NCBI GenBank assembly: GCA_002269645.1
Contig: NIVC01000322.1
Span: forward strand, 1 to 64,000
From: Macrostomum lignano
Lineage: Eukaryota
Direction of reading: 5' to 3'
Length of the DNA: 64,000 nt
Shown here: positions 1 to 52,300 of the stretch, piece by piece
How positions within the stretch are numbered: the stretch's first letter is position 1
How the letters are laid out: each line of letters opens with the position of its first letter
Position numbers and translations under genes: made by a program
Notes under the pieces: generated by a model
The model's input: only the letters and a program-made list of their open reading frames with translations
Told to the model about the DNA's origin: nothing
The model's database searches: none

Positions 1-527
1 TATTTATATAGTTATTTGAATAACTATAACTTCAAATAGTTATTTGAAGGATTGTTGTTTGTCTTTTAAAGTCAAAAATGTGTCGATATTTTTCGCCTTA
101 AAGTAGTATTATGATTTTAGCTTTATTTTTGTTTGGGATAGGGAAATCTTGTGTTGTTTTATTGGTTTAAGTTTCGTCATTTTTGTTATGGGGTATATCT
201 AGAATATATCCTCTTTTGGAACGTTGATTTTTTGCGCGTCATATTTATTTTTTAAAGGATATATTCGATTGTGTCATTTCTACATTCTGCGTCATCCAAA
301 GGCCCGTCAGGTTGTTTACAAACCTGCTAATGTAAAATTACGTATTATTAAACTTAGCCATCGTACTATTCATGTCTTGGTAAAAAAATCGAAGTGGGAA
401 AGACTTTAAGCGGTACACAAACATTATCACCGCCAGTTAAAAAAATTGTCTACAATACTGAAAAGTCGCGTCGCTTTGGTGTCAAGGTCAAAGTCATTGT
501 TCTTTTAATCGGTCGGTCTTGTTATCG

Positions 528-3500
528 TTAGTAGTAACCATTTTGCCGAAGCATCTTAACGGCCAATGCAGCGGCTCGTTCAACGCTCACAGAGACGATT
601 TTTGGCTGTTTTTATAAAATCGAAAAGTTGGTCGTCATTTTTTGTGCTTTTGTCAATGAAGAATATTAAGAAACATTATAATACTACGACGGGCAACTTA
701 CTTTTAATCTAACCAGCTGGCTTATTTTCGTTCGCAGTCGTCTGTGCGTCAAAACGCACTTTTTGTTTTTGTGAATCAGTCTCACAAGCAGTTGTTCGTC
801 TGAGCAAAACTCCAGCGCTGTTAGCAAGTCCTGCACGTCGGAGGTATCAGTTTCTAGGATTTCTTCAAACCAAGCGCTTGACTCAATGAAACTAACTGAT
901 GCATTCATTGCTAGTTTCAGAGACTTCCAGAAAGCATCAAAATTTATATAGTACCAATTTATGTACAGACATGTTACAGGGAAGAGCTCGATCAGACTCT
1001 GCGGCAGGAAATTTAAGGCCAGCTGCGTGTCATGCTCAAAACAAAACTTCCAAGCTGAGTCGCAATGTTTTATTTGCTTCCAAACTACTTCTGTATAATC
1101 CTGTTGGTCTGCTGCTTTAAACTCTAATCGAATTCCTTTACGAAGAAGTGCTTTCGATGCACCGGTACTTAATACGTGGAGAGCCTCATCAAGCTTGCCG
1201 AACTTCATATAAGACATGACTATCAGACACTGTCGGGCAGAAAATGCATAGTCGGGAATCCTCGATGCGTCTTTCAGCAACGACTGCAGCTCATGGTCGC
1301 TAGTACAGTCATTCTTGCCCAATCTCAATAGCAAACTTCGCACTGCGTCATAAAGATCTTCGTACTGGATGTTGTCCCAGTGGATTTCCGTGCTCCTTGC
1401 TTTCATCACTGGCTGCATAAGGAACGGATGAAAGTGGAAAGAGCCGTCTGGCCTGACTGGCCGCAAATTGGCCTTGAATTCGAGAATAACGTTATGAAGA
1501 TCACTAATGACTTTATTAACGACAGTAGCGATGCGTTTCTTCCCACTGTGTCCTTTCTTGAGATACAGACAGGCATTCCGTAGAAAAAAGTGATTCATCA
1601 GTTTATTTTCATCATTTGAGTTGCAGACTAAGCAGCTGTGTAGCTTTCGTAAGGCGATTCTCGTTAGGTAAATCAAACTTCCAGGCTTCCAGTCTTTTGC
1701 TGGTGTTTCATCCAGCAGATAAAATAAGAGATTCTTAGCGTGATAAGTTTTCAACCCTTGAACTTGTGGTGAGATCACTTTCTTCACTATGAACTTTATT
1801 AGCACAAACACCTGACCTTGAATGTCATTAAGGCTTCTGAACAGTTTTCGCTCCAGAAATATGGTGCTCACTCGCAACTGATGGCCCTCCAATCCCGGAG
1901 AGGCAGCCGTCACTAAATGACACGGAAATTCCGGTTGCGACAGAGTGCTCTTCAAGTCTTGCAGCACAGCTGGGTCGATGTTGCTCTTCTCATACAGTGG
2001 CTGTTGAAGTAACTCGATTGGAGGGTAACTGCAGGAGCGAACAGCCCACACGAGATCCACTGCTGGTTTCCAGTCCATTCCAAACCAGGATTGGCCGGGT
2101 TTTCAGCTGAAAAGGAAATTGGACCAAATTGAAGTGTCAATTTTTGCTAATCAAAAGACGTGTTTGCTGTAAATTGTTACTTTTTGCCCGATTGAAACAA
2201 TCTTTTTTGCCTCACCTGTGTTTGGGCAGTAGACGTGTCCGTTTTGGACTTCAATGGCATAAATTCCCAAACTTTTGTCACATTCGCAAGTCTCCTCAAA
2301 GTGAATTACGCGGTTTCTGTCAATAACAGTGACATCAATGTCCGAGCCATGGTCTGTCCGGCCGTCCAATCGCACCAGACTGCTTGACCAGCCCTCGGGA
2401 AAGCTGCCAACAAAGTGAATGTCGTGCTCAACAAACTCGCCAAAGTCTAGTCTGCTTCTCACTATGGACTGTGTGACTTCGGCTAATGCACTTTGTATCT
2501 TGGCTCTTTCTTGAATAAAACCGGCAGAGTTTAAAGTCGAGTGAAGGTTCTTGCTCAACGAAACTTCATATTTGTTGCTGTCACTGCTGCAATTAGCGTA
2601 TTTACATTGTACATTAGCACAAATAGTCAATGAAGCAACGAATATCCATAAGAATACTTACTTTGTTGCTGGATCCGTAATCGAGCTAGCCTGAGTATCA
2701 ATCTTTGATGATTGATCATCAAGCAGTTGACGCAATGCCACCACAGAATCAAGACTGCTGTAATCCGGTAGCTGATTGACAGTTGAGCTGTGTCGCATCA
2801 GTTGAACCAGAGTTTCACATTGACCTAATACGCACGCCATTACAGCAGCCGTTAATCCAGCTCTATTCTTGATACTTGGATCGCATCCTTCTTTAAGCAA
2901 CTGCTGGATGACTTCTTCTCTGCCGGCGCATGCAGCAGCATGCAACACTGACTCTCTCGTCGTGAAGAAGCGCTTTCGGGTCGGCGCCAGCGAGAACTAG
3001 CTCAGCTATGGAGTCTGAAGAGCCGCTGTAAGCTGCTGCGCAAAGAGGTGTCACTCCTCGATTATCTGATAAATTAGGATCAGCATTCGCTTTCGAAAGC
3101 ATGGCCCGTAGCAAGATTGTATATCCTTTCTGAGCTGCCAGAAGCAGGGGCGTCACATGATCAACTCTTTTTGAGTTGCTGTCCGCCCTCGATGAAAGCA
3201 GCAATTTTACTACCTTCTCAAAGCCTTTCCCAGCCGCGATGTGCAATGCGGATGCACCAAAAGTTCGCTTAATATTGACATCAGCATGAGCTTCCGTCAG
3301 CAGCTCCACGATAATTGAATGGTCGTGCCAAGCGGCCAGGTGTAGAGGGCTTTGTCCGTCATTGTCTTGCAAATCGACCTGCGCCATCCAATTAATGAGT
3401 AGTCTTACGGCTCCTTCCTGGCCGCGTTCGGAAGCCCAGTGAATCGCTGACCGACCAGTTGCATCCTTGGAGTCGGGATCAGCGCCTCTTTGCAGAAGCT

Positions 3501-3597
3501 GTTCAAGTTTTAGCACATTTCCATTGATTGCTGCCAGTCTTAGTAGTGATACTTCTTTGTCAATTGACGCAGGTGCATTTTTAGAAGGAATATCCAT
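528..3597 (-). CDS. Ankyrin-repeat (8x) + cGAS-like/Mab-21 nucleotidyltransferase (cGLR), copy 1; 4 exons, two 1-nt frameshifts (possible pseudogene or assembly error)
   Basis: Exons 3597-2662, 2586-2216, 2106-702, 605-528. Introns: GTAAGT..TTGCAG (75 nt, phase 2), GTGAGG..TTTTCAG (109 nt, phase 1), GTAAGT..AAACAG (96 nt, phase 0). Ankyrin motifs SAIHWASERG, SPLHLAAWHD, SALHIAAGKG, TPLLLAAQKG and others. NTase motif VGSFPEGW...SDIDVTVI, then PAVDLVW, CHLV...LRVSTIFLERKL and Mab-21 C-lobe LKTYHAKNLLFYLL...W...L..L. Frameshifts near 2955-2960 (+1) and 2100-2103 (-1). Confidence 0.85.
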
Positions 3598-5049: not shown

Positions 5050-8000
5050 AGTGGTATGCCCTGACTGACTGGGGTTTAGTTTATGTATGCTTGTACCATT
5101 GAGTATTTTATTCTTTAAAATACACGCGACCGCCAAGAGAAACTTCAGATTGCTTGGCCACACGAACACCACATTGGTGGCAGCGGTGAAAAGAGAAAAG
5201 CTACGCTCGCAACTAGAGAATGTTATACACAGTTATACAGCATTGGGCATTTCGATCCAGACGAAGATCCGCTCAACATTCAGATAAGTGGAACGACTAT
5301 GTGCAGGAAGTCGAGCTGTTCATGGAAGTGCAAGGAATAGCTGACGAAAAGAAGCAAGCCACATTATTGCTTTTAGCAGGGCCGAAAATCTGAAAGTTGT
5401 TGCAAACTGTAAACTATGAACAAGGCTACGAAGCAACGAAGGAAGCGCTCAGCTCTATTCCAAGGTGCAACCAACAGCGTCCATGAGACTTACAAGCTGC
5501 TGTCAGTCAGCCAGATAGAGGGAGAACCGTTTAATACCTTCTACAGTCGTCTAAAAAGTGCAGCAAAGTACTGCAACTTACACGTCGAGTACAAGACTGA
5601 AGGAAATGAGAGAACACAATAAAGCTCAGCTTCGAGGATCGTCTGCTACGCGATCTGATAGTCCTAAAGAGCACGTCAAAGCCGCTAAGGACTCTGCTGC
5701 TAAAGGAAAGCTCTGACCTCACCTTGAAGAAAGCAGTAGAAATCAGCAAGAATTTCGAAGCAACAAATACACAGGCTAAAGACATTGAAAAACCAACCAA
5801 TGAGGCGCGCAACACAGTCAGCAAAATAAACAACAGACCAACTAGCAATCTACAGTTCAAACAGACTGGCAAGCGGACATCAACTCCAAACACCAACAAG
5901 TGCGATCGAGTCTGCTACAGATGCAACAGGACAGGCCACCGTCCTTAGATTGCTTCGCTCGTGACATGGAATGCAAGCATGGAGACTAAATCTAAAGACA
6001 AGGAGCAGAATAAACACCAGAAATATCCAGATGTTTGAGCAACCGGAACAGCAAAGTGGCAACGACGAATCGAATGGCGAAGAAATCAACACTGTCGCTA
6101 TGACTGAATCGAAGGACTCAGCAGGCACAAGAACCAAAGTGAAGATCAATGGTATTGAGAGTACAGTGCTCATTGACTCCAGATCCTCAGCAAGTTTGAT
6201 CACAGGAATCAGAAAAGGAAAGACTAGTAAGGTACGACTGACCGTTGACTTAAGAAACTCAACGAGGCAACGGAAAAGCTACAATTTCCTATCCCATCTC
6301 TGGATGATCAGCTCACAAATATAGGAGAAGCAAGCTGCTTCAGCTAAATTGATGGCAAGAAAATGTTCCATCAAATTGAACTGGACAGTGAATCTAGAGA
6401 CATCTGACAAAGTTCTCAACAGGAATCCCTGGACAACCGCTATACAGGTACAAACGATTGCCGATGGGTTGGGTCAACTCGTCATTCTACGAGTATCTCC
6501 AAGCCTACATAACAAAAGTTTTGGCTGGTTTACAAGGACTGCTAAATATTCAGGATGATTTAATTGTGTATGGACAGGACGTCAAGGAGCACAGCAACAG
6601 GCCAAAGCAGGTCTTAGCAAGACTCGTGGAGAACGGCATGACCGTTGGAAAGAAAAAATGCAAATTTGGAATGAGTAAAGCCACTTTTATGGGATTTATT
6701 CTGACCGAGAAGGGAATAACCATCCAAGAGAATAGAACTGAAGCTATTCAAATGTTCAAACCACCATGCAATCCAAGTGAAGTTGAATCGTCTAGCACAA
6801 TTTGTTGCTCGATTCGTACCAAACCTAGCAACCTTGTCGAAGCCTCTGAATGACCTCACAAAGAAAGGAAAGACCTGGGAATGGGGCCCAGAACAAGAAA
6901 CTTCTTTCAACAGCATCAAAGCAGCGATGGGCTCAACGGAAACGCTCGCGTACTTTGGAACAGGGCGAGAAACACAGCTGCGAGTAGACGCTAGTCCTGT
7001 CGGTCTTGGTGCGATCTTGGTTCAGCGGCAGAAAGATGGAAATCTGCAGCCAGTTTGCTATGCCAGTAGAAATCTCACAGGCGTGGAGACTCGATACAGT
7101 CAAATCGAGCGAGAAGCATTGGCAATAAAATGGTGATGCGAGAAATTTTCTCACTTTCTCAAAGGAGCAGCCGAATTCACGGTGATAACGGATCATAAAC
7201 CTCTACTCGGGTGTTTTGCATCAAACTCAAAACCACCACCAAGAGTTGAGCGTTGGGCAATGAGATTGCAACCATTCAAATTTAACATAAAATATGAACC
7301 AGGCGACACCAACGAGGCAGATATTTTGTCGAGACAGCCGGTGAAAAAACCAAACGACTACCACTCGAGATTTCCTCTAGTGTTCATCATGAAGCGCACT
7401 GAATCGAGCGACGTAGTGCGAATTCTAAAGAAAGTGATTTCACTATTTGGACCAATGAAAGAAATCGTCTCAGACAACGGAACAAATTTCTGTTCGAAAG
7501 TCGTTGACGAATACCTTAACAGTCAAGGCGTCATTCACTCGCGGATTCCGCGTCACCCAGCAGCAAATGGGGAGGTGGAAAGATTCAATGAAACATTGAA
7601 CAAAGTCATCAGAAGGTCCAGAATTTTGAACGGATCAAGTTTTGAACAGGAGTTGCAAATCTTCTTGCACGCCTGCAGAACAGCGCCAATGAGAGCAACA
7701 GGACAAAACTTCCTCAAATGAACGACCAGACAATGTATCCTTTGGTGAAGCAGAAAGATAAAGGCGCCGACTACAAAAGAAAAATGTCCAACTATGCTAA
7801 TCGGAACGCTCGTGACTGCGACATCAAAACAGGTGACTCAGTAGTGATTGAAAGGGAAGCAAGGAACAAGCACGACAGCTTTTTTGGTACAGAGCAATAC
7901 TATGTAAGGAAGCGAGTCGGAGGACTGCTGATCCTGGAGAACAAAAGTGGCACAATCAAGAAGCGCCACGTTAACAAGGCCAGAAAGATATTCCCAGACT

Positions 8001-20125: not shown

Positions 20126-20761
20126 ATGGCAGACCGCGAGCCGGAGAGCAACGAGGACACCCTGCCACCAATGCAGACAGTCGGTTCTGTGGGCACCGGG
20201 AAGCCTTCCGCTGCCACGGCGTCGTCAAACTCGCAGCCGCCGGTCACCGGACGTCGCGGAACCATGACGTCCGGAGCTCTCGGACCTCGGCGCTCGATTG
20301 TTGGCGGCCTGCTGGGCCGGACCGCCCTGATGTCGCTGGGCAACCTTGCCAATAGCCGTCGGAGCAAGGCGCAGGAAATCCGCCTGGAAAACACCTACCG
20401 GATGCAGCCCAAACAGGAGGAGCGCCTCCGCGGCTTCCGACTCAAGCCGATTCTGACCGACACCCTGACGGAGGCCCTGGCCAGCTACCAGTACGACCCC
20501 GCAACCGCCGGCCGCAGAGCCTGCGACATCGCCCAGATGATCCGGAACCGAGTGAAGGAGGCCGGCTTTGAGCGGTACAAGTTCGTCGTGTTCGTCCTGC
20601 TGCTGCAGTGCCCGAAGAAGCCGGGCGATGCCGGCGGAGCCTGTCTTGCCAGCAGAGCGCTCTGGTCGCCTGGCGAATGCGCCGACAATTGCATCGAGGC
20701 GGAGGTGGCGGGGCCAACGGCCAGAGGCCACGCTACTCTTCATGCACTCTACTATGAGTAG
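20126..20761 (+). CDS. Tctex1-domain dynein light chain (TCTEX1D/DYNLT4-5 type), single coding exon, 211 aa
   Basis: ENTYRMQP...F...YDP...A..IR.RVKE..FERYKFVV.V...ASRALW..YYE terminal motif. Confidence 0.9.
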   Translation: MADREPESNEDTLPPMQTVGSVGTGKPSAATASSNSQPPVTGRRGTMTSGALGPRRSIVGGLLGRTALMSLGNLANSRRSKAQEIRLENTYRMQPKQEERLRGFRLKPILTDTLTEALASYQYDPATAGRRACDIAQMIRNRVKEAGFERYKFVVFVLLLQCPKKPGDAGGACLASRALWSPGECADNCIEAEVAGPTARGHATLHALYYE

Positions 20762-21067
20762 GATATTAGCGTACTGTTGGAATTTTTAAATTCATTTACA
20801 GAAAGCAAAATTTTATTGATATAATAATTTTTTTGAGGCCGAATAATAATGCTTGCAACTTCAATTTAAAAGTACACATGCCCTCAAAGTTTAATTAGCA
20901 TAACTTTTCTGTGCTTTTTGTTTAAACTATAATTTTCTGTACATGTACACGTGTGCAAAATAAAACACTAATGTCTTAAAATACTTTATTCAAACATTCT
21001 GTTCGCATCTCAACGTAGGGTATTTCAAAGATTCCAAGGCTAAATTGGAAGTTGCTGAGATGCCCCG

Positions 21068-23238
21068 GCTCAATTAGCGCCATTGCTATCCCATTGGCGC
21101 CATCGCTATCCCATTGGCGCCATCGCTATCCCATTGGCGCCATCGCTATCCCATTGGCGCCATTGCTATCCCAGGGGCACCATTGCTATCCCATTGGCGC
21201 CATTGCTATCCCATTGGCGCCATCGCTATCCCATTGGCGCCATTGCTATCCCATTGGCGCCATCGCTATCCCATTGGCGCCATCGCTATCCCATTGGCGC
21301 CATTGCTATCCCATTGGCGCCATCGCTATCCCATTGGCGCCATTGCTATCCCAGGGGCGCCATCGCTATCCAGTTGGCGCCATCGCTATCCCATTGGCGC
21401 CATCGCTAGCGCCATTGCTATCCCATTGGCGCCATCGCTATCCCATTAGCGCCATTGCTATCCCATTGGCGCCATCGCTATCCCATTGGCGCCATCGCTA
21501 TCCCATTGGCGCCATTGCTATCCCAGGGGCACCATTGCTATCCCATTGGCGCCATTGCTATCCCAGGGGCGCCATCGCTATCCAGTTGGCGCCATCGCTA
21601 TCCCATTGGCGCCATCGCTAGCGCCATTGCTATCCCATTGGCGCCATCGCTATCCCATTAGCGCCATTGCTATCCCATTGGCGCCATCGCTATCCCATTG
21701 GCGCCATCGCTATCCCATTGGCGCCATTGCTATCCCAGGGGCACCATTGCTATCCCATTGGCGCCATTGCTATCCCATTGGCGCCATCGCTATCCCATTG
21801 GCGCCATCGCTATCCCAGGGGCGCCATTGCTATCCCATTGGCGCCATCGCTATCCCATTGGCGCCATTGCTATCCCAGGGGCGCCATCGCTATCCAGTTG
21901 GCGCCATCGCTATCCCATTGGCGCCATCGCTAGCGCCATTGCTATCCCATTGGCGCCATCGCTATCCCATTGGCGCCATTGCTATCCCATTGGCGCCATC
22001 GCTATCCCATTGGCGCCATCGCTATCCCATTGGCGCCATTGCTATCCCAGGGGCACCATTGCTATCCCATTGGCGCCATTGCTATCCCATTGGCGCCATC
22101 GCTATCCCATTGGCGCCATCGCTATCCCATTGGCGCCATCGCTATCCCAGGGGCGCCATTGCTATCCCATTGGCGCCATCGCTATCCCATTGGCGCCATC
22201 GCTATCCCATTGGCGCCATTGCTATCCCAGGGGCGCCATTGCTATCCCATTGGCGCCATTGCTATCCCATTGGCGCCATCGCTATCCCATTGGCGCCATT
22301 GCTATCCCATTGGCGCCATCGCTATCCCATTGGCGCCATCGCTATCCCATTGGCGCCATTGCTATCCCATTGGCGCCATCGCTATCCCATTGGCGCCATC
22401 GCTATCCCATTGGCGCCATCGCTATCCCAGGGGCGCCATTGCTATCCCATTGGCGCCATCGCTATCCCATTGGCGCCATCGCTATCCCATTGGCGCCATT
22501 GCTATCCCAGGGGCGCCATTGCTATCCCATTGGCGCCATTGCTATCCCAGGGGCACCATTGCTATCCCATTGGCGCCATTGCTATCCCATTGGCGCCATC
22601 GCTATCCCATTGGCGCCATCGCTATCCCATTGGCGCCATTGCTATCCCATTGGCGCCATCGCTATCCCATTGGCGCCATCGCTATCCCATTGGCGCCATC
22701 GCTATCCCAGGGGCGCCATTGCTATCCCATTGGCGCCATCGCTATCCCATTGGCGCCATCGCTATCCCATTGGCGCCATTGCTATCCCAGGGGCGCCATT
22801 GCTATCCCATTGGCGCCATTGCTATCCCAGGGGCACCATTGCTATCCCATTGGCGCCATTGCTATCCCATTGGCGCCATCGCTATCCCATTGGCGCCATC
22901 GCTATCCCATTAGCGCCATTGCTATCCCATTGGCGCCATCGCTATCCCATTGGCGCCATCGCTATCCCATTGGCGCCATTGCTATCCCATTGGCGCCATT
23001 GCTATCCCATTGGCGCCATCGCTATCCCATTGGCGCCATCGCTATCCCATTGGCGCCATCGCTATCCTATTGGCGCCATCGCTATCCCATTGGCGCCATT
23101 GCTATCCCATTGGCGCCATCGCTATCCCATTGGCGCCATCGCTATCCCATTGGCGCCATCGCTATCCCATTGGCGCCATCGCTATCCCATTGGCGCCATC
23201 GCTATCCCATTGGCGCCATCGGTATCCCAGGGGCGCCA
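21068..23238. repeat. 20-bp minisatellite, ~109 copies
   Basis: (GCTATCCCATTGGCGCCATC/T)n with CAGGGGC variants; all overlapping long ORFs are artefacts. Confidence 0.97.
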
Positions 23239-23669
23239 TAGCACACAGCACATTCGATGATGCGATAGTCCTGGGCTGCAATACACAGGCCCTGCATGCT
23301 GCACAATGACATTGGAAATAGCAAGCGCTAAAAATTTCATTAGCTTGGCTAACTTGCATCGTTTAAACTAATTAATTCATCGTTAAACCTTATTTTCACA
23401 AGGATCCCACGTGGCTGTCGACCTGTGATAAATCTGTGACATCCGCCACCCCACCACGGGCTGCACTGACGCCTTGCACTGCAATGGTCTTATCAATTTT
23501 CTTATCTCAACGAACATAGCGCTTTCTAACGTTCTGCCACTGTGTCATTCCTAATGCGTAAATATACAATGTTCAAACTTTTGTTCTGAAGAACTTTTTC
23601 TAGTTTTCTTAAAGTGAAAGACGAATAACTCTCAGACCGAGGTCGGTAAGGCTCGGCATTGCCAGCGAA

Positions 23670-26600
23670 ATGAACCTGCTCCCGGAGCTGAAGAGCGCCG
23701 CCATGGACGGCAGAGTCGGCAAGGTGCGGCAGTTTCTACGGAGCAGCGTCAGTCCGGACGTCGCTGACGACCGGCAGCGGACGGCGCTGCACTGGGCAGC
23801 CGAGCGAGGCCAGTCCAGGGTGGCGAGGCTTCTCATCGAGGCCGGAGCTCAGCTGGACGCTCAGGACAGCAGCGGGGCGACCGCTCTGCACCTGGCCTCG
23901 ATGCACGGCCACCGGGATGCGGTCCGGCTGCTGCTCGAGTCCGAGGCCGACACCAGCCTGGTGACGAAGTCCAGCTCCTCGGCGCTGCACCTCGCCTCGC
24001 GGAACGGCCACCTCGAAGTAGTGCAGCTGCTGAGCCGGCAAGCCGACTGCGACCAGCAGCTTGCAGACGGAGACTCGCCGGTGCACCTGGCTGCTCAGCT
24101 CAGGCAGCAGCTCGTGCTCGCTGCTCTGCTGCTGGCAGCCGCGGATCCGAGCGCCAGGAATGCGCGCGGCCAGACCCCGCTGCACTCCGCGGCTCTCCAC
24201 GGCCAGCGGGCCGCCATTGAGCTGCTCGTCCGGGCGGGAGTCGCCGCCGACTCGCTGGCCTGCGACGGGTCGACGCCGCTGCACGCTGCGGCAGCGATGG
24301 GGCACGAGGCCGCTTCCCAGACTCTGCTGCAGCTCGGCTGCGGGCTCGGTGACCTCAACAAGGACGGGCTCAGCCCCGCTGCCATCGCCTGTCGCTTCGG
24401 ACATCGCGAGGTCTTGCATCTGCTGCTCAAGAATGCGACTCACGCCAGAGAGCTCGGAATCCGGCACGAAGGAACAAATAGACGGCTGCAGCAGCTGATT
24501 TATGATCGTCTTATCATTGAACCTCGAGCTCATAGACTGTCGCTCAGGTCGTCTGCATTCGATGAGAGGTTGGAAGCTCGTAAATCTTGTTTTACTCATA
24601 TTTATGTTAATCATTTTTGAAATGCCGATTTCCTGTTACACAGAAGCGAGCAGGAAGCTGACAGCATGCGCGACGACGAGCATCTAATCGAAGTCGAACC
24701 AGAAGACGACGGCTTCCCAGCGTGTCAAGAGAGCAGCACTAAGCTGCACAAAGCACTGAAAGATTGCGGTTTTGTTCTGAACCGAGTCAAGCTGCAATCT
24801 GCGTGCTCGGATGCTTTGCAGCATATCGTTAGAAAGCGACTGGACGCAGATGAGTACAAGGACTACCAAGTGTACATCGTCGGGAGCTACAGTGACGGCT
24901 GGTCCAACAGCCTGGTTCGACTGGACGGTCAAACTGACGCAGACTCCGACATCGACGTCTGCCTCATAGCGATCGGCATGCTGTTCCATATCAAAGGCAG
25001 CTGCAGCTGCATCAACTGTTCATTTTTTGGAGAACGTCACGCTGAAGTGGAGTATGAGAACGGTCACGTCAAATGGGGCGAATCGCGTAAGCAAATTTAC
25101 AATATTTTCGGTTTAGCGTTGCCAGAGAGTTTGCATAACGAATGCCTAAAACCTTCACTGCAGCTTCGAATCCGTCGCAGCGGTGGGCCGGATCTGACGA
25201 GAGACCGGCAGTGGATCTGGTTTGGGCCTTTCGCTGCTGTTGCTATCCAAGAATCGAAGTGCTGCAGCCAGGGTACAAAACTTGCATTGCTCCATCAGTG
25301 CTGCAGAGCCTGAGGCAGGAGATGCTGGAGTCTCCCTGTCACCTGGTGTCGGCGGCTCCACCTGGCAAGGACGGACAACAGCTGAGGGTCAGCACCACCT
25401 TTCTGGAGCGAAGGCTGCTCAGAAGCCTCACAATCGAACAGGGACACGTGTTCCTGCTCATCAAGTTCATCATTAAGAAGGTGATTGCAGCTCGCGTGAG
25501 TGGACTGAAGACCTACATTGCCAAGACCCTGATGTTCCAGCTGCTGGATGAAACGCCCGCAGTGGACTGGCACAGTAGCCTTCTAATCCAGTTAGCGAGA
25601 AGGGCACTGCTCATGCTGTTGAACTCATTGAGAGACACACCAGATCCGCGTAAATGCATGAGACACTTCTTTCTCAAAGACGCTTGGGTTTATCTGAAGA
25701 AACATCACGATGAGAAGGAAGTCATTGCGCTCGCGGTACGTAACGTAGTCGATCATCTCCCAGAAATTGTCTCGCAATACGAAAGAGTTCTGTCGCCTTT
25801 AGTGCAGGACAAAAGTTTTAATTTTCACCCGTTCCTGGTGCTGCCAATCCTGAATCCGAGGCCCGTGCCGCTGTCTTCAAGGCTGCAGTTCCACGACGTC
25901 TACGATGCGATCCGATCAATTTTATTGAAGCTCAATCTCGGACGCTACCTGCTGGAGGACAAACACGAGATGCTGAAGTTGGCAAGAAGAATTCCGGAGT
26001 ACGCTCGCTCTGCAAAATATTCGCTGATTGCGTTGATTTACTTGAAGTTCGGCAAGCTGTACGCAGCGCGAAGGGTGCTGCACTCGTGTCGATATCATCA
26101 GGTTAGCCGAGTTCTGCCCCGCTTGCGTGAGCAAGTGACTGATGCAGATGCGGAACTGGCGGTGTGGGAGCACTTGGAAGGGGTCAGCTCCATTTGGAAG
26201 CTCCTGATTCAATCTGACAAGCCTTTGGCTTTCGACTTCCTGCCAGACAGGTTAAAAGATTTTGTCTCGCTGAGCTCTGGTCAGTTTGACTGGTACTATG
26301 TGAACTTTGATGCGCTGCTCAAAAACCTGAGCATCTGGTTAGACTACGACGTCGACTTGGAGCTTTGGTTCGAAGACAACCTTCGACGCGCCAGACTTGA
26401 CGTTCAAGAGCTGCTTGTGACGCTGGAACTTTGCAATGATGACGAACATTCTTGTCCGACTGATTCACAAGCATCGGACATTAGTTTGCGGCCATCAGGA
26501 GACGAGACAGAAGGCTGAAGAGCTGATGCAGCGATTGGTAAGTGATCCTGTTTTGCGGAAATTTCAAAATTTGTGCCAGTTAGTTCTGTACTTACAGGTA

Positions 26601-27581
26601 CCTTGACTCCACCCACCAGGTCCAGTTAAAAAATCTCTGTAATTTGAGTAGCAGGTAACATCAAAGTAACATCTTTGCTAAGAGAGGTTGACAACAAATC
26701 AACCCATTGGGCTTGTCACTAAGGTCCACGAAAATCGAATGGTATTTACTATTATATTGAACATTTGGTTGTAGGCAGAACCCCATGGTAAGATGTATTT
26801 GTGTAGGAGATAGTATCTGCTCTATAGTCACAGCAAACCAAATAAAGATAATGAAACTATACATTTGCAAGAGGTTGTACGCGATTGAAAGATCGGAGGC
26901 GGGGGTTCGATTCTCGACCCAATCGGAAAAAATCTGTGTCCTTGAGCAAGACACTTAAAACTCTTGCATTGCTTCCGTTCTCCCAGCTGTAAAACGGGTA
27001 AAATTTAAATTGAGTGTGAGTGTTGTAATACCTAGCCTAGCAACTATCATTTACCCAATGCTTTTCAGCCATCACTGGCTGAAAAAAGCTCACAAAGGAC
27101 TGTGCAAGCCCTGGCTTCTACCGTAGCAGATCCCGACTGTCTCGATGAGAGAGCTGATGAAGAACCGGCAGCAAATTCAAGCTTGGTGAAGTTGCTCACC
27201 TGTTTCTCCCTGTCGCTGCTGATCTCGCTGGCAAAGCGGTCGAGACGCCGCGGATTCCGCGCGGTGTCTGAGGCGTTCCTTGAGGCAGCAATGCGGAAGC
27301 GAGCGGCCCGTCGGATTCGGGGCAGCATTTTGGGGATTTATTTCTTTGCTAAGATTGCAATATTAAGCTCGGTGTTTGTGTTTTTACTGTTACTCCTGCT
27401 CATGGTTGCCACTGGTTATATAAAGGACTCTGAGCTGGCCTCGACCATGACCTATGTGGCTATCCTGGTCATCATGATGGCCATGTTTGTGCCGGCTTGT
27501 TTGATGTGCGTCGACGCTTCCAGATCTGTTAATCGCACGGTTGAAGCTGTGGACTCTGGCTATGAAGAGCGAGCTGGATAG
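23670..27581 (+). CDS. Ankyrin-repeat (8x) + cGAS-like/Mab-21 nucleotidyltransferase (cGLR), copy 2, with predicted C-terminal transmembrane exon; one +1 frameshift near 26450
   Basis: Exons 23670-24568, 24644-25086, 25164-26537, 27069-27581. Introns: GTTGGA..ACACAG (75 nt, phase 2), GTAAGC..CTGCAG (77 nt, phase 1), GTAAGT..TTTTCAG (531 nt, phase 0). Motifs VGSYSDGW...SDIDVCLI, PAVDLVW, CHLVSAAPP..QLRVSTTFLERRL, LKTYIAKTLMFQLL. After removing 1 nt at ~26450 the frame reads LVRLIHK, as in copy 1. Confidence 0.85.
26860..27000 (+). mobile_element. tRNA-derived SINE fragment in cGLR copy 2 intron 3
   Basis: B-box GGTTCGATTC (26904-26913) followed by TGTGTCCTTGAGCAAGACACTTAA and CCCAGCTGTAAAACGGGTA, which resemble the conserved central domain of widespread metazoan SINEs. 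Confidence 0.6.
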
Positions 27582-27831
27582 TTGTGCTCAATGTTGCGGA
27601 GGGAATATCCTAGGGACAACGTACAAGCAATCTGAATCGCTTACTAATAAATCTCTAGATTATTGAAAAGTTGCATGCAAGGTTAGCGAATTTTAAAGTA
27701 CTTTTACCTGTGACACTGTTCACCTGTGCATGCGATTTTGTGGAAAATATATGCAGAGTGAACATTTTTGTTTGAATGCATCCGCCACGTTTCTCGCTAC
27801 ATAAACGGTAAATCGATATTGCTCCTGATTT

Positions 27832-49300: not shown

Positions 49301-52300
49301 GCGCCACAGGCACTCATTTTAGCGCAAGAGGCACTCATTTTAGCGCCGCAGGCACTCATTTTAGCGCCGCAGGCACTCATTTTAGCGCCGCAGGCACTCA
49401 TTTTAGCGCCGCAGGCACTCATTTTAGCGCCGCAGGCACTCATTTTAGCGCAAGAGGCACTCATTTTAGCGCCGCAGGCACTCATTTTAGCGCCGCAGGC
49501 ACTCATTTTAGCGCCACAGGCACTCATTTTAGCGCAAGAGGCACTCATTTTAGCGCCGCAGGCACTCATTTTAGCGCCGCAGACACTCATTTTAGCGCCA
49601 CAGGCACTCATTTTAGCGCAAGAGGCACTCATTTTAGCGCCGCAGGCACTCATTTTAGCGCCACAGGCACTCATTTTAGCGCAAGAGGCACTCATTTTAG
49701 CGCCGCAGGCACTCATTTTAGCGCCGCAGGCACTCATTTTAGCGCCGCAGGCACTCATTTTAGCGCCGCAGGCACTCATTTTAGCGCCACAGGCACTTAT
49801 TTTAGCGCCGCAGGCACTCATTTTAGCGCCGCAGGCAGTCAATTTAGCGCCACAGGCACTCATTTTAGCGCCGCAGGCACTCATTTTAGCGCCGCAGGCA
49901 CTCATTTTAGCGCCGCAGGCAGTCAATTTAGCGCCACAGGCACTCATTTTAGCGCCGCAGGCACTCATTTTAGCGCCGCAGGCACTCATTTTAGCACCAC
50001 AGGCACTCATTTTAGCGCCCTGAAACAAAATTATTGCTTTACACAACGGGTCATAAGGTGAAGTGGGGGGAACAAAGCATTGCCATGTCCCCCCCCCCAT
50101 AGCTTTTACTGGGGGACTGGGGGCAGATGTGCCCCCTGTCTCCCCCCCCCCTTGGTGGCGACGCCCCTGATGTTGTTTATAATCAAAATTTTCTAATTTA
50201 GTTCTCATATTACTTCACTTACTTTGCGTTCCCTAACATTCTAACAAATTCTAACTATTTTGTATACATTATATAAAGAGGTAAATAAGTACAATCTAAT
50301 TCAACCACTTATCTTAATAAGCTATAGGAAATGAAATTTTCAAAATTTATCACTATGAAGGCTTAACATTTGTAGATTATGTTTACAGCTTAACTTGATC
50401 AACCTTAATTGGTGGCATACTTTGTACCTAATATTTTTTCTCTATCTTCTGTTTGCTAACTGTTTGCCTGCTTGATGCTGGTGGCAGCTGTGAAGGCACT
50501 GCAGTACTGGCTTGAGTGTGAGAGACTGCTGCAGAGACTAGCTAGATATGTTAACTGAAATCTAACATCTTTTCTTGGTCCTGCGATTGAGCGGAAAAAG
50601 TGGGACAGATAACTACTGATTAAGTAGATAGAAAGGTAGATAGTTAGATAAAAGAGGTAGCTAGAGAAAGAAGAGAGGCCTAGATAGAGATAAGAAAGGT
50701 AGATAAAGAGAGAGAGGAGAGGGTTAGATTGAGAGAGAAGAGCGATAGAGAGGGGAGGGGTAGATAGAGAGGAGGAGAAGTAGATAGAGAGGAGGAGGGT
50801 AGATAGAGAGGAGGAGGGGTAGATAGAGAGGAGGAGGGGTAGATAGAGAGGAGGAGGGGTAGATAGAGAGGAGGAGGGGTAGATAGAGAGGAGAGGGGTA
50901 GATAGAGAGGAGGAGGGGTAGATAGAGAGGAGGAGGGTAGATAGAGAGGAGGAGGGGTAGATAGAGAGGAGGAGGGGTAGATAGAGAGGAGGAGGGGTAG
51001 ATAGAGAGGAGGAGGGGTAGATAGAGAGGAGGAGGGGTAGATAGAGAGGAGGAGGGGTAGATAGAGAGGAGGAGGGGTAGATAGAGAGGAGGAGGGTAGA
51101 TAGAGAGGAGGAGGGGTAGATAGAGAGGAGGAGGGGTAGATAGAGAGGAGGAGGGTAGATAGAGAGAGGAGGGGTAGATAGAGAGGAGGAGGGGTAGATA
51201 GAGAGGAGGAGGGGTAGATAGAGAGGAGGGGTAGATAGAGAGGAGGGGTAGATAGAGAGGAGGGGTAGATAGAGAGGAGGGGTAGATAGAGAGGAGGGGT
51301 AGATAGAGAGGAGGGGTAGAAACGAGAATGTAGGTAGATAACAAGAGAAGAGAACAATTGCAGTAGACGCAGATAAGAAAAGTATATAGAAATTTTTAAA
51401 AGCGGTCAGAAAAACTTTTGAGCAGTAATTTTGCCAGTCAGCAATAAAAACAGACTCAGCCGCACACTCTTACAGCACAGATTCCAATGCAGTGCTCAAA
51501 CTTCAAACAAACCTCCCCCTATCTGCCCACCAACCCGCAGTCGCTACGGCTTCAGCCTTTTCACCAGACCGACATCCCGGATCTGGGCGACTTCGCCCTT
51601 CAACCAGCGGGCAGAGACGCGGCCGGATCGCTGAAGTGTCGCATCAGCCGACACTCCCGCGGCATGGACGGGTCCCGCTACCCGACCTACTATCTGCATC
51701 TGGAACGCGACGATGGCAAACGAAGCTTCTTGCTGGCCGCCAGAAAGCGCAAACGTTCGTCAACATCAAACTACTTGATCTCCTGCGATCCCACCGATTT
51801 AAGTCGACGCGGCGAGGGCTACGTTGGAAAGTTGAGAGCAAATTTTCTTGGGACAGCGTTCACCGTGTTTGATTCAGGATTGTCGCCGAAGAAGCTCACT
51901 GCGGCCAAGTCACCGGAGGCTAGTAGGAGGGAGCTGGCTGGGATCACCTACGAGACTAACGTGCTGGGATTTCGCGGCCCCAGGAAAATGACTGTGGTCC
52001 TGCCAGCGATGTTGGAGGCTGAGGAGGGCGACTGCGTCAGGGTGGACATCAGACCGAATTCTGAGGAGGAGGGGCTGGTTGAGAGGCTGAAACGGAGGGA
52101 GATGTCGCATCTGATGGAGCTGCATAACCGAACTCCGGTTTGGAATGAGGGTGAGTTGCTGGGATCTGGGACTGACTATTGGGATCTGGGACTGATTGTT
52201 GGGATCTGGGACTGACTATTGGGGTCTGGGACTAACTGTTGGGATCTGGGACTAACTGTTGAGATCTGGGACTAACTGTTGAGATCTGGGACTAACTGTT

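What the first reader, a model, noticed from the sequence alone, without database searches (positions are those of the whole stretch)
23670..27581. Predicted membrane-anchored ankyrin-cGAS-like receptor (ANK8-cGLR-TM), hidden by splicing and one frameshift
Seen: the cGLR reading frame, after removing 1 nt at ~26450, runs LVRLIHKHR...ELMQRL into a consensus phase-0 donor TTG|GTAAGT (26538). The hydrophobic ORF at 27102-27581 is preceded by a phase-0 acceptor TTTTCAG| (27068) and is open from 27069. Joining gives ~1075 aa ending in 2-3 TM-like segments (LVKLLTCFSLSLLISLA; ILGIYFFAKIAILSSVFVFLLLLLLMVATG; MTYVAILVIMMAMFVPACLMCV). Paralog copy 1 has a GTAAGT donor at the homologous codon, so this donor is probably real. 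Known: cGLRs (Mab-21/cGAS family) make cyclic dinucleotide second messengers and the characterised ones are soluble. Inference: a sensor(ANK)-cyclase-membrane-anchor protein in one chain is an unusual architecture for an animal innate-immune receptor.
Basis: partly seen in the sequence, partly recalled or inferred. Interest (0 to 1): 0.88.

Follow-up and report, generated by a model that had tools for sequence, protein, structure and literature searches.

The report
Flatworm ankyrin-cGAS-like gene with membrane tail
This stretch of Macrostomum lignano (flatworm) DNA holds a four-exon gene for an ankyrin-repeat, cGAS-like enzyme that ends in a membrane-anchoring tail; an RNA-based paralogue in GenBank has the same layout, but a one-base frameshift may break this copy.

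Summary
The window is Macrostomum lignano DNA.

- **Gene model.** Exons 23670-24568, 24644-25086, 25164-26537 and 27069-27581 join through GT..AG introns. With one extra base (C26447) removed, they give a 1075-aa protein.
- **Domains.** It has 8 ankyrin repeats, a cGAS/Mab21-type nucleotidyltransferase core with an intact GS / DxD / D catalytic set, and a tail with three hydrophobic segments, two of them strong.
- **Decisive support.** GenBank PAA55664.1 (1073 aa), a paralogue from the RNA-seq-based Mlig_3_7 annotation, has the same four exons, the same phase-0 junction and a homologous tail.
- **Frameshift.** UniProt models of this same gene from another assembly read in frame (CNDDEILVRL) and carry the exon 3-4 join. 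The frameshift is therefore either an assembly error or specific to this copy. If real, this locus makes an 898-aa soluble protein.
- **Fold.** An AlphaFold2 model of the 69%-identical paralogue core matches only cGAS, MAB21L1, MB21D2 and Sp-cGLR1.
- **Novelty.** Ankyrin-cGLR fusions, and M. lignano cGLRs of this family, were already catalogued (Li et al. 2023). I found no description of the C-terminal membrane tail. It is a new variant of a known kind.
- **Untested.** Enzyme activity, ligand, membrane topology and immune role.

The parts
23670..24568 (+). Exon 1: start codon and 8 ankyrin repeats (aa 1-299 plus 2 nt, phase 2 donor AG|GTTGGA)
   Evidence: Ank_2 E 8e-53 and six Ank hits. The AF2 model of the paralogue, 91% identical in this exon, shows 8 helix pairs. 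Exon 1 is 96% nt-identical to L003 exon 1, starting one base before the ATG.
24569..24643 (+). Intron 1 (75 nt, GT..AG, phase 2)
   Evidence: Splice sites read. Copy 1 has an intron of about the same size in the same phase. P0003 and P0046 join at the same place.
24644..25086 (+). Exon 2: N-terminal half of the nucleotidyltransferase core, with G380-S381 and D402-I-D404
   Evidence: GS and DxD are invariant in the 20-sequence family alignment A1.
25087..25163 (+). Intron 2 (77 nt, GTAAGC..CAG, phase 1)
   Evidence: P0003 reads HVKWGES|PSNPSQ across it. P0046 has its intron at the same position.
25164..26537 (+). Exon 3: third catalytic Asp (D465), the Mab-21_C lobe and a family-specific helical extension of about 200 aa; ends at donor TTG|GTAAGT
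   Evidence: D147 of A1 is invariant. Mab-21_C scores 14.3 bits here and 25-32 bits in paralogues. The family profile hits cGAS and Sp-cGLR1 in PDB. Foldseek result.
26447..26447 (+). Extra C that shifts the frame (gaaCatt); without correction the protein ends at TGA 26516-26518 (898 aa)
   Evidence: P0001, P0002 and P0003 read CNDDEILVRLIHKHR with no gap. Copy 1 and P0046 are in frame here.
26538..27068 (+). Intron 3 (531 nt, GTAAGT..TTTTCAG, phase 0); holds a dispersed repeat at 26900-26997 and an AATAAA at about 26843
   Evidence: RNA-based paralogue models P0011 and P0046 have an intron at exactly this codon, and P0043 has one 5 codons later. The repeat is 82% identical to L003 2450-2544.
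27069..27581 (+). Exon 4: 170-codon tail and stop TAG 27579-81
   Evidence: It is the only open frame, with exon-like GC and codon use. It is 100% identical to P0002 residues 858-936 and 36% identical, in register, to the tail exon of P0046.
27183..27233 (+). Hydrophobic segment 1 (aa 944-960, LVKLLTCFSLSLLISLA), weak
   Evidence: KD 1.78. The homologous segment in P0046 is FILVKLFICLCSLSPLVFLA, KD 2.45.
27234..27326 (+). Polybasic linker (aa 961-991, 12 K/R against 2 D/E)
   Evidence: Conserved in P0046 and P0045 (KSRRYGF..RKH.ARR.RGS).
27327..27416 (+). Hydrophobic segment 2 (aa 992-1021), strong
   Evidence: KD up to 3.04.
27447..27512 (+). Hydrophobic segment 3 (aa 1032-1053), strong
   Evidence: KD up to 2.77.
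27646..27651 (+). AATAAA, 65 nt after the stop: candidate polyadenylation signal
   Evidence: Read directly.
702..3597 (-). Paralogue copy 1 (ANK-cGLR, about 45% identical in exon 3): exons 3597-2662, 2586-2216 and 2106-702, with donor AAA|GTAAGT at the homologous codon. It has two frame breaks of its own (about 2958-2949 and 2071-2067). Its last exon is not in the window.
   Evidence: Mab-21_C E 3.4e-7. No tail homologue in 1-706. No close database counterpart.

Best explanation
The region is a four-exon Macrostomum lignano gene from a large lineage-specific family of ankyrin-repeat cGAS-like receptors.

- **Product.** The intended product is about 1075 aa. It has eight N-terminal ankyrin repeats (a protein- or ligand-binding or regulatory module). 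It then has a cGAS/Mab21-fold nucleotidyltransferase with a complete catalytic set (GS, DxD, D) and a family-specific helical extension. A last exon supplies a weakly hydrophobic helix, a strongly basic linker and two strong transmembrane-type helices.
- **Mechanism.** The most likely mechanism is a membrane-tethered cGLR. The enzyme sits on the cytosolic face of a membrane, held by the C-terminal helices and the basic linker, and makes a nucleotide second messenger there when activated.
- **Shown.** Gene structure, domain content, conservation of catalytic residues, the fold of a close paralogue, and the existence of the same architecture in an RNA-based paralogue model.
- **Inferred.** Use of the 26537^27069 junction at this locus, membrane insertion and topology, catalysis, the activating ligand and an immune role.
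- **Frameshift.** The extra C at 26447 is more likely an assembly or copy-specific lesion than a feature of the gene.
For: - **Organism and family.** All 43 hits are M. lignano ANK/Mab-21 proteins.
- **Same gene in another assembly.** P0001 and P0002 carry CNDDEILVRL in frame and the join ELMQRL|PSLAEKSS.
- **RNA-based paralogue.** P0046 = PAA55664.1, 1073 aa, has the same four exons, a homologous phase-0 last junction and a three-segment hydrophobic tail. The Mlig_3_7 annotation is RNA-seq-guided (PMC5730564).
- **Conserved intron position.** P0011 has its last intron 26 residues after 'LIH', exactly as in copy 2 and copy 1. P0043 has one 5 codons later.
- **Catalytic residues.** They are invariant in the 20-sequence family alignment.
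- **Sequence link to cGAS.** The family profile hits only cGAS, Sp-cGLR1 and MAB21L1 in PDB, best E 1.8e-5.
- **Fold.** The AF2 core model has pLDDT 88.6 and pTM 0.89. The 50 best Foldseek hits listed are all cGAS, MAB21L1, MB21D2 or Sp-cGLR1, with E down to 1e-7, target-normalised TM 0.40-0.58 (mostly 0.5 or more) and mostly about 360-430 aligned columns.
- **Exon 4.** It is the only open frame and has exon-like composition. Tail conservation gives a crude dN/dS of about 0.23-0.25.
- **Literature.** Relatives were catalogued and cloned as cGLRs by Li et al. 2023.
Against: - No transcript evidence could be obtained for this locus. No NCBI (RNA-based) protein matches it, which suggests low or no expression or a different assembly.
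- The window sequence as given is frameshifted. The neighbouring paralogue has two frameshifts of its own, so both could be young pseudogenes in a birth-and-death family.
- The window protein alone is below the Pfam threshold for Mab-21_C and has no PF03281 hit.
- The structure was predicted for a 69%-identical paralogue, not for this protein.
- The tail is only 36% identical between the two paralogue groups, and synonymous sites are saturated.
- No topology predictor was available. The basic loop lies between segments 1 and 2, which makes a simple three-span topology with a cytosolic enzyme awkward.
- Li et al. cloned five M. lignano relatives, but the main text names none of them as active (0 mentions of Macrostomum).
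Confidence: 0.72

Rival explanations
1. The frameshift is real at this locus. This copy then encodes an 898-aa soluble ANK-cGLR that ends ...CNDDEHSCPTDSQASDISLRPSGDETEG. It lacks the last conserved helix and the membrane tail, or it is a young pseudogene. The TM-anchored form would be made only from other copies.
For: - The window sequence has the extra C at 26447, and the stop at 26516-18 lies only 19 nt before the junction.
- Copy 1, 20 kb away, has two frame breaks of its own and no database counterpart.
- No RNA-based NCBI protein corresponds to this locus.
- M. lignano is a neopolyploid with many near-identical duplicates, so redundancy would tolerate the loss.
Against: - Three independent database models of this gene are in frame at the site.
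- Downstream of the shift, the frame-0 sequence still matches the paralogues (LVRLIHKHR..ELMQRL against LVQLVQRHR..EQLMQES). Exon 4 is fully open and identical to P0002 over 79 aa. Any lesion is therefore very recent.
- PacBio-based assemblies of this genome are known to contain broken ORFs.
Confidence: 0.35
2. Exon 4 is not part of the cGLR mRNA. It would belong to a separate small membrane-protein gene (for example starting at Met 972, MRKRAARR...), reached by spliced-leader trans-splicing at the 27068 acceptor. The cGLR would end by read-through or polyadenylation within intron 3.
For: - 38.8% of M. lignano genes are trans-spliced, and about 7% of transcription units are polycistronic.
- There is an AATAAA inside intron 3 at about 26843.
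- P0001 and P0002 stop at ..AAMRKRA, just before the strong TM helices.
Against: - The RNA-based model PAA55664.1 joins the homologous exons in one CDS. The pipeline that made it cuts units at trans-splice sites.
- The part of exon 4 upstream of the first Met is conserved as protein between paralogues (SLAE[KR]S..RT..AL, hydrophobic segment 1, basic linker).
- Intron phase and position are conserved across the family.
Confidence: 0.05
3. The protein is a membrane-anchored Mab21-fold scaffold rather than a signalling enzyme, by analogy with MiD49/MiD51. The nucleotidyltransferase fold would bind a nucleotide or partner without making a second messenger, and the ankyrin repeats would recruit other proteins.
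For: - Only the C-lobe is recognisable by sequence, and PF03281 is not hit.
- MAB21L1 and MB21D2, which have no established product, match the fold about as well as cGAS does.
- None of the five M. lignano relatives cloned by Li et al. is mentioned as active in the main text.
Against: - GS, DxD and the third Asp are invariant across the 20 aligned paralogue sequences despite only about 40% overall identity. That argues for selection on catalysis.
- From my own knowledge, MiD49/51 have lost these residues.
Confidence: 0.15

Closest known systems
Macrostomum lignano PAA55664.1 (BOX15_Mlig031018g1, hypothetical protein, 1073 aa)
   Same: It has the same four-exon structure and the same order of 8 ANK repeats, cGLR core and tail. 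The last intron is at the homologous codon in phase 0. The three hydrophobic segments and the basic linker are in register. Protein identity is 91% in the ANK exon and about 69% in the core.
   Different: It is a distinct locus with different neighbours (flotillin and F5/8 type C genes). Its tail is only 36% identical, its intron 1 is about 1 kb against 75 nt here, and it has no frameshift. It is unannotated beyond 'hypothetical protein'.
Animal cGAS-like receptors (cGAS, Drosophila cGLR1, Sp-cGLR1); ANK-cGLR fusions catalogued by Li et al. 2023
   Same: It shares the bilobal nucleotidyltransferase/Mab21 fold and the GS + DxD + D active site. ANK repeats fused N-terminally are a listed architecture. 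M. lignano members of this family were in their catalogue and in their cloning set.
   Different: Sequence identity to solved cGLRs is only 10-16% in the Foldseek alignments. There is an extra helical extension of about 200 aa after the Mab21 C-lobe. There is a C-terminal hydrophobic tail, and I found no description of a transmembrane cGLR in the papers searched. Product and ligand are unknown.
MiD49/MiD51 (MIEF2/MIEF1) and ITPRIPL1: membrane-anchored members of the Mab21/cGLR superfamily
   Same: A Mab21-type fold tethered to a membrane. They are listed in the same superfamily by Culbertson & Levin 2023.
   Different: Their anchors are N-terminal and single-pass, and MiD proteins lack the catalytic residues (both from my own knowledge). 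Here the anchor is C-terminal with 2-3 segments, the catalytic set is intact and ANK repeats are present. The window protein is not a member of these subfamilies.
STING (the membrane-resident receptor of cGLR products)
   Same: It is a membrane-embedded component of cGLR signalling with multi-helix anchoring.
   Different: STING is the receptor, not the synthase. Its TM domain is N-terminal with 4 helices. No homology was detected. Whether M. lignano has a STING was not tested here.

Membership tests
cGAS-like receptor / Mab21 nucleotidyltransferase superfamily | Bilobal cGAS/Mab21 fold (NTase N-lobe plus helical C-lobe) | tested here: met
   The AF2 model of the 69%-identical paralogue core has pLDDT 88.6 and pTM 0.89. 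The 50 best Foldseek PDB hits listed are all cGAS, MAB21L1, MB21D2 or Sp-cGLR1, with E down to 1.1e-7 and target-normalised TM 0.40-0.58. The window protein itself could not be folded because the spliced sequence was not accepted.
cGAS-like receptor / Mab21 nucleotidyltransferase superfamily | Catalytic GS motif, [DE]h[DE] dyad and third acidic residue | tested here: met
   G380-S381, D402-I-D404 and D465 in the window model. The corresponding columns are invariant in the 20-sequence family alignment.
cGAS-like receptor / Mab21 nucleotidyltransferase superfamily | Pfam Mab-21 (PF03281) and/or Mab-21_C (PF20266) above the gathering score | tested here: inconclusive
   The window protein scores 14.3 bits (E 0.046) for Mab-21_C against a cut-off of 24.1, and has no PF03281 hit. 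Copy 1 scores 30.8 bits and paralogues P0009, P0011, P0017 and P0029 score 25-32 bits. The family profile against PDB gives Sp-cGLR1 at E 1.8e-5 and cGAS at 1e-4.
cGAS-like receptor / Mab21 nucleotidyltransferase superfamily | Ligand-activated synthesis of a nucleotide second messenger | not testable with these tools
   This needs purified protein and a nucleotide-product assay. Five M. lignano relatives were cloned by Li et al. 2023, but the main text names none as active.
Ankyrin-repeat proteins | Tandem 33-residue ANK repeats | tested here: met
   Ank_2 E 8.1e-53, Ank E 6.1e-41 with 6 stretches. There are 8 helix-pair repeats in the AF2 model of the paralogue.
Integral membrane / C-terminally anchored proteins | Hydrophobic helices long enough to span a bilayer | tested here: met
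   Kyte-Doolittle 19-residue maxima are 3.04 (aa 990-1026) and 2.77 (aa 1027-1057), with a weaker 1.78 (aa 942-961). P0046 has matching segments at 2.45, 2.30 and 2.96.
Integral membrane / C-terminally anchored proteins | Actual membrane insertion and defined topology | not testable with these tools
   No TM-topology predictor or experiment was available. The loop between segments 1 and 2 has 12 K/R, so it is probably cytosolic. Whether segment 1 spans the membrane is open.
MiD49/51-type membrane-anchored Mab21 proteins | N-terminal single TM anchor and a degenerate catalytic site | tested here: not met
   There is no N-terminal hydrophobic segment, the anchor is C-terminal and the catalytic residues are intact. 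The defining features themselves are recalled from the literature.

The most novel reading that the evidence does not exclude
M. lignano has evolved membrane-integrated cGAS-like receptors. At least two paralogue groups (this gene and Mlig031018) would tether an active ANK-cGLR to a membrane through a Macrostomum-specific C-terminal helical hairpin plus a basic linker. Nucleotide second-messenger synthesis would then be confined to a membrane surface, possibly next to its receptor or a membrane-bound pathogen structure. That would be the first cGLR that is itself an integral membrane protein. A further, unverified gene model (P0018) places a signal-peptide-like segment and a TM helix N-terminal to ANK-cGLR, hinting at repeated membrane anchoring in the family.
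Probability: 0.45. Interest if true: 0.68.

Novelty: new variant of a known kind. Interest (0 to 1): 0.52.

Why it matters
The cGLRs characterised so far are described as soluble cytosolic sensors, and their products diffuse to membrane-bound STING. A cGLR that is itself anchored in a membrane, and that carries ankyrin repeats, would show that the synthase side of the pathway can also be compartmentalised. That would raise testable questions about which membrane, which ligand and which receptor.

It also shows that a flatworm lineage has a large expansion of ANK-cGLRs, at least 40 database proteins, in a phylum where most members are reported to lack immune cGLRs. M. lignano is transgenic-tractable, so localisation and knock-down experiments are feasible.

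In practical terms, the finding flags an unannotated or mis-assembled gene and a single-base problem at 26447 in this assembly.

Tried and rejected
1. A word-index protein search with the 199-aa tail returned nothing, although P0001 shares 108 identical residues. I treated this as a sensitivity failure, not as evidence. The exhaustive HMMER search later found P0002 and P0045.
2. Exact look-ups of P0001, P0004, P0045 and of the window ORFs 25142-26518 and 27102-27581 found nothing on record. No second genomic or transcript copy of this locus could therefore be fetched.
I used the closest intact paralogue instead.
4. The full-length AF2 model gave only ankyrin/DARPin matches in Foldseek. I repeated the search with the core alone.
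5. A search for a copy-1 terminal exon in window 1-706 gave only chance-level matches. Whether copy 1 has a TM tail cannot be told.
6. A search for a database counterpart of copy 1 found none closer than 42%, so it could not be used to calibrate the assembly's indel error rate.
7. ARAGORN found no tRNA in the window. The tRNA-like motif in intron 3 is a dispersed repeat.
8. The weak Pfam match of the tail to Cation_ATPase_C (E 0.005, 17 bits against a cut-off of 27.3) was rejected as hydrophobic-composition noise.
9. I considered exon 4 as an independent trans-spliced gene and rejected it as the main reading, because of the PAA55664.1 model and the conservation upstream of the first Met.


Full report
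**What is there.** The window is genomic DNA of the free-living flatworm Macrostomum lignano. A search with the cGLR-plus-tail protein returned 43 proteins, all from that species and nearly all annotated as ankyrin-repeat or Mab-21 proteins. On the plus strand, four open segments join through canonical GT..AG introns.

| Part | Coordinates | Note |
|---|---|---|
| Exon 1 | 23670-24568 | Ankyrin repeats |
| Intron 1 | 24569-24643 | 75 nt, phase 2 |
| Exon 2 | 24644-25086 | N-terminal half of the NTase core |
| Intron 2 | 25087-25163 | 77 nt, phase 1 |
| Exon 3 | 25164-26537 | Rest of the core and helical extension |
| Intron 3 | 26538-27068 | 531 nt, phase 0, GTAAGT..TTTTCAG |
| Exon 4 | 27069-27581 | Hydrophobic tail, stop TAG |

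An AATAAA lies 65 nt after the stop.

**The frameshift.** Unedited, it stops at TGA 26516-18 and gives 898 aa. Removing one base gives a 1075-aa product. Database models of the same gene read CNDDEILVRLIHKHR (P0001, P0002, P0003). That pins the lesion to an extra C at 26447 (gaaCatt).

**The paralogue in the window.** Copy 1 lies on the minus strand at 3597..702. It is about 45% identical in the exon-3 region. It has introns in the same phases and AAA|GTAAGT at the homologous codon. It has two frame breaks of its own, in a (GA)n run near 2950 and an A-run near 2070. Its last exon is not in the window, and no close counterpart exists in the protein database.

**Is exon 4 part of this gene?** Four lines of evidence say yes.

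- **Composition.** Exon 4 is the only open frame of six (0 stops against 4-11). Its GC is 0.525, like exons 2-3 and unlike intron 3 at 0.395. It has a positive codon-usage score only in frame 0.
- **Models from another assembly.** UniProt models P0001 and P0002 contain ELMQRL|PSLAEKSS and continue into exon 4. These look like ab initio models: they skip or read through other introns. They are therefore weak evidence for splicing, but good evidence that other copies are in frame.
- **Conserved intron position.** Paralogues from the NCBI Mlig_3_7 annotation come from a genome-guided RNA-seq assembly that is cut at trans-splice and poly(A) sites (Wudarski et al. 2017, PMC5730564).
  - P0011 has its last intron at the same place: 26 residues after the 'LIH' motif, phase 0, followed by an 11-aa terminal exon.
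  - P0043 has a phase-0 intron five codons later, followed by a 23-aa exon.
- **A full-length paralogue (decisive).** The 90% cluster of P0004 contains PAA55664.1 (BOX15_Mlig031018g1, 1073 aa).
  - It maps to locus L003 as four exons with introns at the same positions. It joins ...EQLMQES|QSLAERS... at the codon homologous to 26537^27069.
  - Its 175-aa last exon aligns in register with the window's exon 4. The shared elements are the SLAE[KR]S..RT..AL start, hydrophobic segment 1, a basic linker (KSRRYGF...RKH.ARR.RGS), and hydrophobic segments 2 and 3. A short C-terminal tail keeps an N-x-T. Identity is 36%.
  - A crude dN/dS is about 0.23-0.25, but synonymous sites are saturated, so this is only indicative.

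An exhaustive HMMER scan of 1.84 billion representative proteins with the exon-4 peptide found only M. lignano models of these two paralogue groups, plus one repeat artefact. The tail is therefore lineage-specific and has no known family.

**Is it a cGLR?** The evidence supports this, though the window protein's own Pfam score is weak.

- **Pfam.** The ANK domain is unambiguous (Ank_2 E 8e-53). The window core is below threshold for Mab-21_C (14.3 bits against 24.1). Copy 1 and several paralogues pass at 25-32 bits. PF03281 is not hit by any of the proteins scanned.
- **Family profile.** A profile of 20 family cores hits only cGAS, Sp-cGLR1 (8gjy, E 1.8e-5) and MAB21L1 in the PDB.
- **Catalytic residues.** The alignment has an invariant GS, S-D-x-D and a third Asp. 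In the window model these are G380/S381, D402/D404 and D465.
- **Fold.** The spliced window protein was not accepted for folding. I modelled the core of the 69%-identical paralogue instead (pLDDT 88.6, pTM 0.89). Its 50 best Foldseek matches in the PDB are all cGAS, MAB21L1, MB21D2 or Sp-cGLR1. E reaches 1e-7, target-normalised TM is 0.40-0.58, and most alignments span about 360-430 columns.
- **Other structure.** The full-length model shows eight ankyrin helix pairs and a disordered linker before the core. About 200 residues after the Mab21 C-lobe form a family-specific helical extension.

**How it probably works.** The best-supported reading is a membrane-tethered cGLR. The ANK repeats would bind a ligand or partner, or regulate the enzyme. 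The catalytically competent core would make a nucleotide second messenger. The tail would fix the protein to a membrane.

The loop between segments 1 and 2 has 12 K/R and 2 D/E. By the positive-inside rule it should be cytosolic. With a 940-residue N-terminal domain and no signal peptide, the simplest topology puts the enzyme and the basic linker in the cytosol. Segments 2 and 3 would form a hairpin, and segment 1 would be peripheral or re-entrant. This is inference, since no topology predictor was available. Activity, ligand, membrane identity and immune role are all untested.

**Rivals.**

| Rival | Confidence | Main reasons |
|---|---|---|
| The frameshift is real here, giving a soluble 898-aa protein or a young pseudogene | about 0.35 | For: broken copy 1 next door, and no RNA-based model for this locus. 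Against: three in-frame database versions, and intact conserved sequence downstream of the shift. |
| Exon 4 is a separate trans-spliced gene | about 0.05 | Against: the PAA55664.1 model, and protein conservation upstream of the first Met. |
| A non-enzymatic scaffold like MiD51 | about 0.15 | Against: invariant catalytic residues. |

**What is known already.**

- Li et al. 2023 (PMC9980059) list ANK-cGLR as one of the minority architectures. [quoted passage not shown]
- Their tables include M. lignano ANK-cGLRs (PAA67649.1 and PAA58690.1 with Ank_2).
- They cloned five M. lignano proteins of this family (Table S3, rows 89-93). The main text does not mention the species.
- Their domain table uses CDD/Pfam and holds no TM calls. 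'Transmembrane' appears only for STING.
- Searches for Macrostomum with cGAS, cGLR with ankyrin, and cGLR with transmembrane found no description of a membrane-anchored cGLR.
- The broader superfamily does have membrane-anchored members (MiD49/51, ITPRIP-like; listed). Their anchors are N-terminal and their sites degenerate, which I state from my own knowledge.
- The architecture itself already sits in GenBank as an unremarked 'hypothetical protein'.

I therefore rate this a new variant of a known kind, of moderate interest.

**Verdict.** The integrity of this particular copy and all functional claims remain open.

Noticed in passing
window 23669-24492 vs L003 6000-6823: The ANK exon is 96% nt-identical between this gene and paralogue Mlig031018, beginning one base before the ATG. 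Exons 2-3 are 72% identical and the tail exon gave no nucleotide-level match (36% aa identity). This mosaic suggests gene conversion or exon exchange limited to the ankyrin exon.
   Followed up: partly
window ~21050-23240: A long tandem array of a 20-bp unit (cgctatcccattggcgccat) lies about 430 bp upstream of the gene's ATG. It creates spurious ORFs of 400-520 codons in several frames.
   Followed up: no
window ~27850 to beyond 28200: A second tandem array (unit of about 50 bp, catctgacacatct[c/t]acctgtact...) starts about 270 bp after the exon 4 stop.
   Followed up: no
window 26900-26997 (intron 3): A dispersed repeat with a tRNA-like box-B motif (ggttcgattctcgaccc), 82% identical to L003 2450-2544. 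ARAGORN calls no tRNA, so it is probably a tRNA-derived SINE fragment.
   Followed up: partly
window 3597-702 (minus strand): Paralogue copy 1 has two frame breaks, at about 2958-2949 in a (GA)n run and at about 2071-2067 in an A-run. It has no in-frame stops otherwise and no database counterpart closer than 42%. It is either an unannotated gene hit by assembly indels or a young pseudogene.
   Followed up: partly
window 7182-7721 (+): ORF with an integrase core domain (rve, E 4e-10): a retroelement remnant between the two cGLR copies.
   Followed up: no
window 20126-20761 (+) and 51487-52215 (+): ORFs matching the Tctex-1 family (E 6e-13) and the Tub family (E 8e-47). These are probably exons of neighbouring host genes.
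   Followed up: no
P0018 (UniParc UPI0007A359CB, 1151 aa, not in window): A paralogue gene model with a signal-peptide-like segment and a strong TM helix (QVIGYIIIFGVLGHVLIGLLICCGLCCCPCC) N-terminal to ANK-cGLR. It could be a second way of anchoring this family to membranes, or a chimeric gene prediction.
   Followed up: no
P0049-P0051 (JGI metagenome contigs and an NCBI 'Kangiellaceae bacterium' MAG contig): Proteins 39-42% identical to copy 1's core occur on short environmental contigs, one of them binned as a bacterial MAG. They are probably flatworm or other animal DNA in metagenomes (contamination of the MAG).
   Followed up: no
P0047 (UniProt A0A1I8G2H1, 870 aa): This model of the Mlig031018-type paralogue ends at ...LELCED, the position homologous to the window's frameshift site. 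It may be coincidence, or this short stretch may be prone to assembly or indel problems.
   Followed up: no
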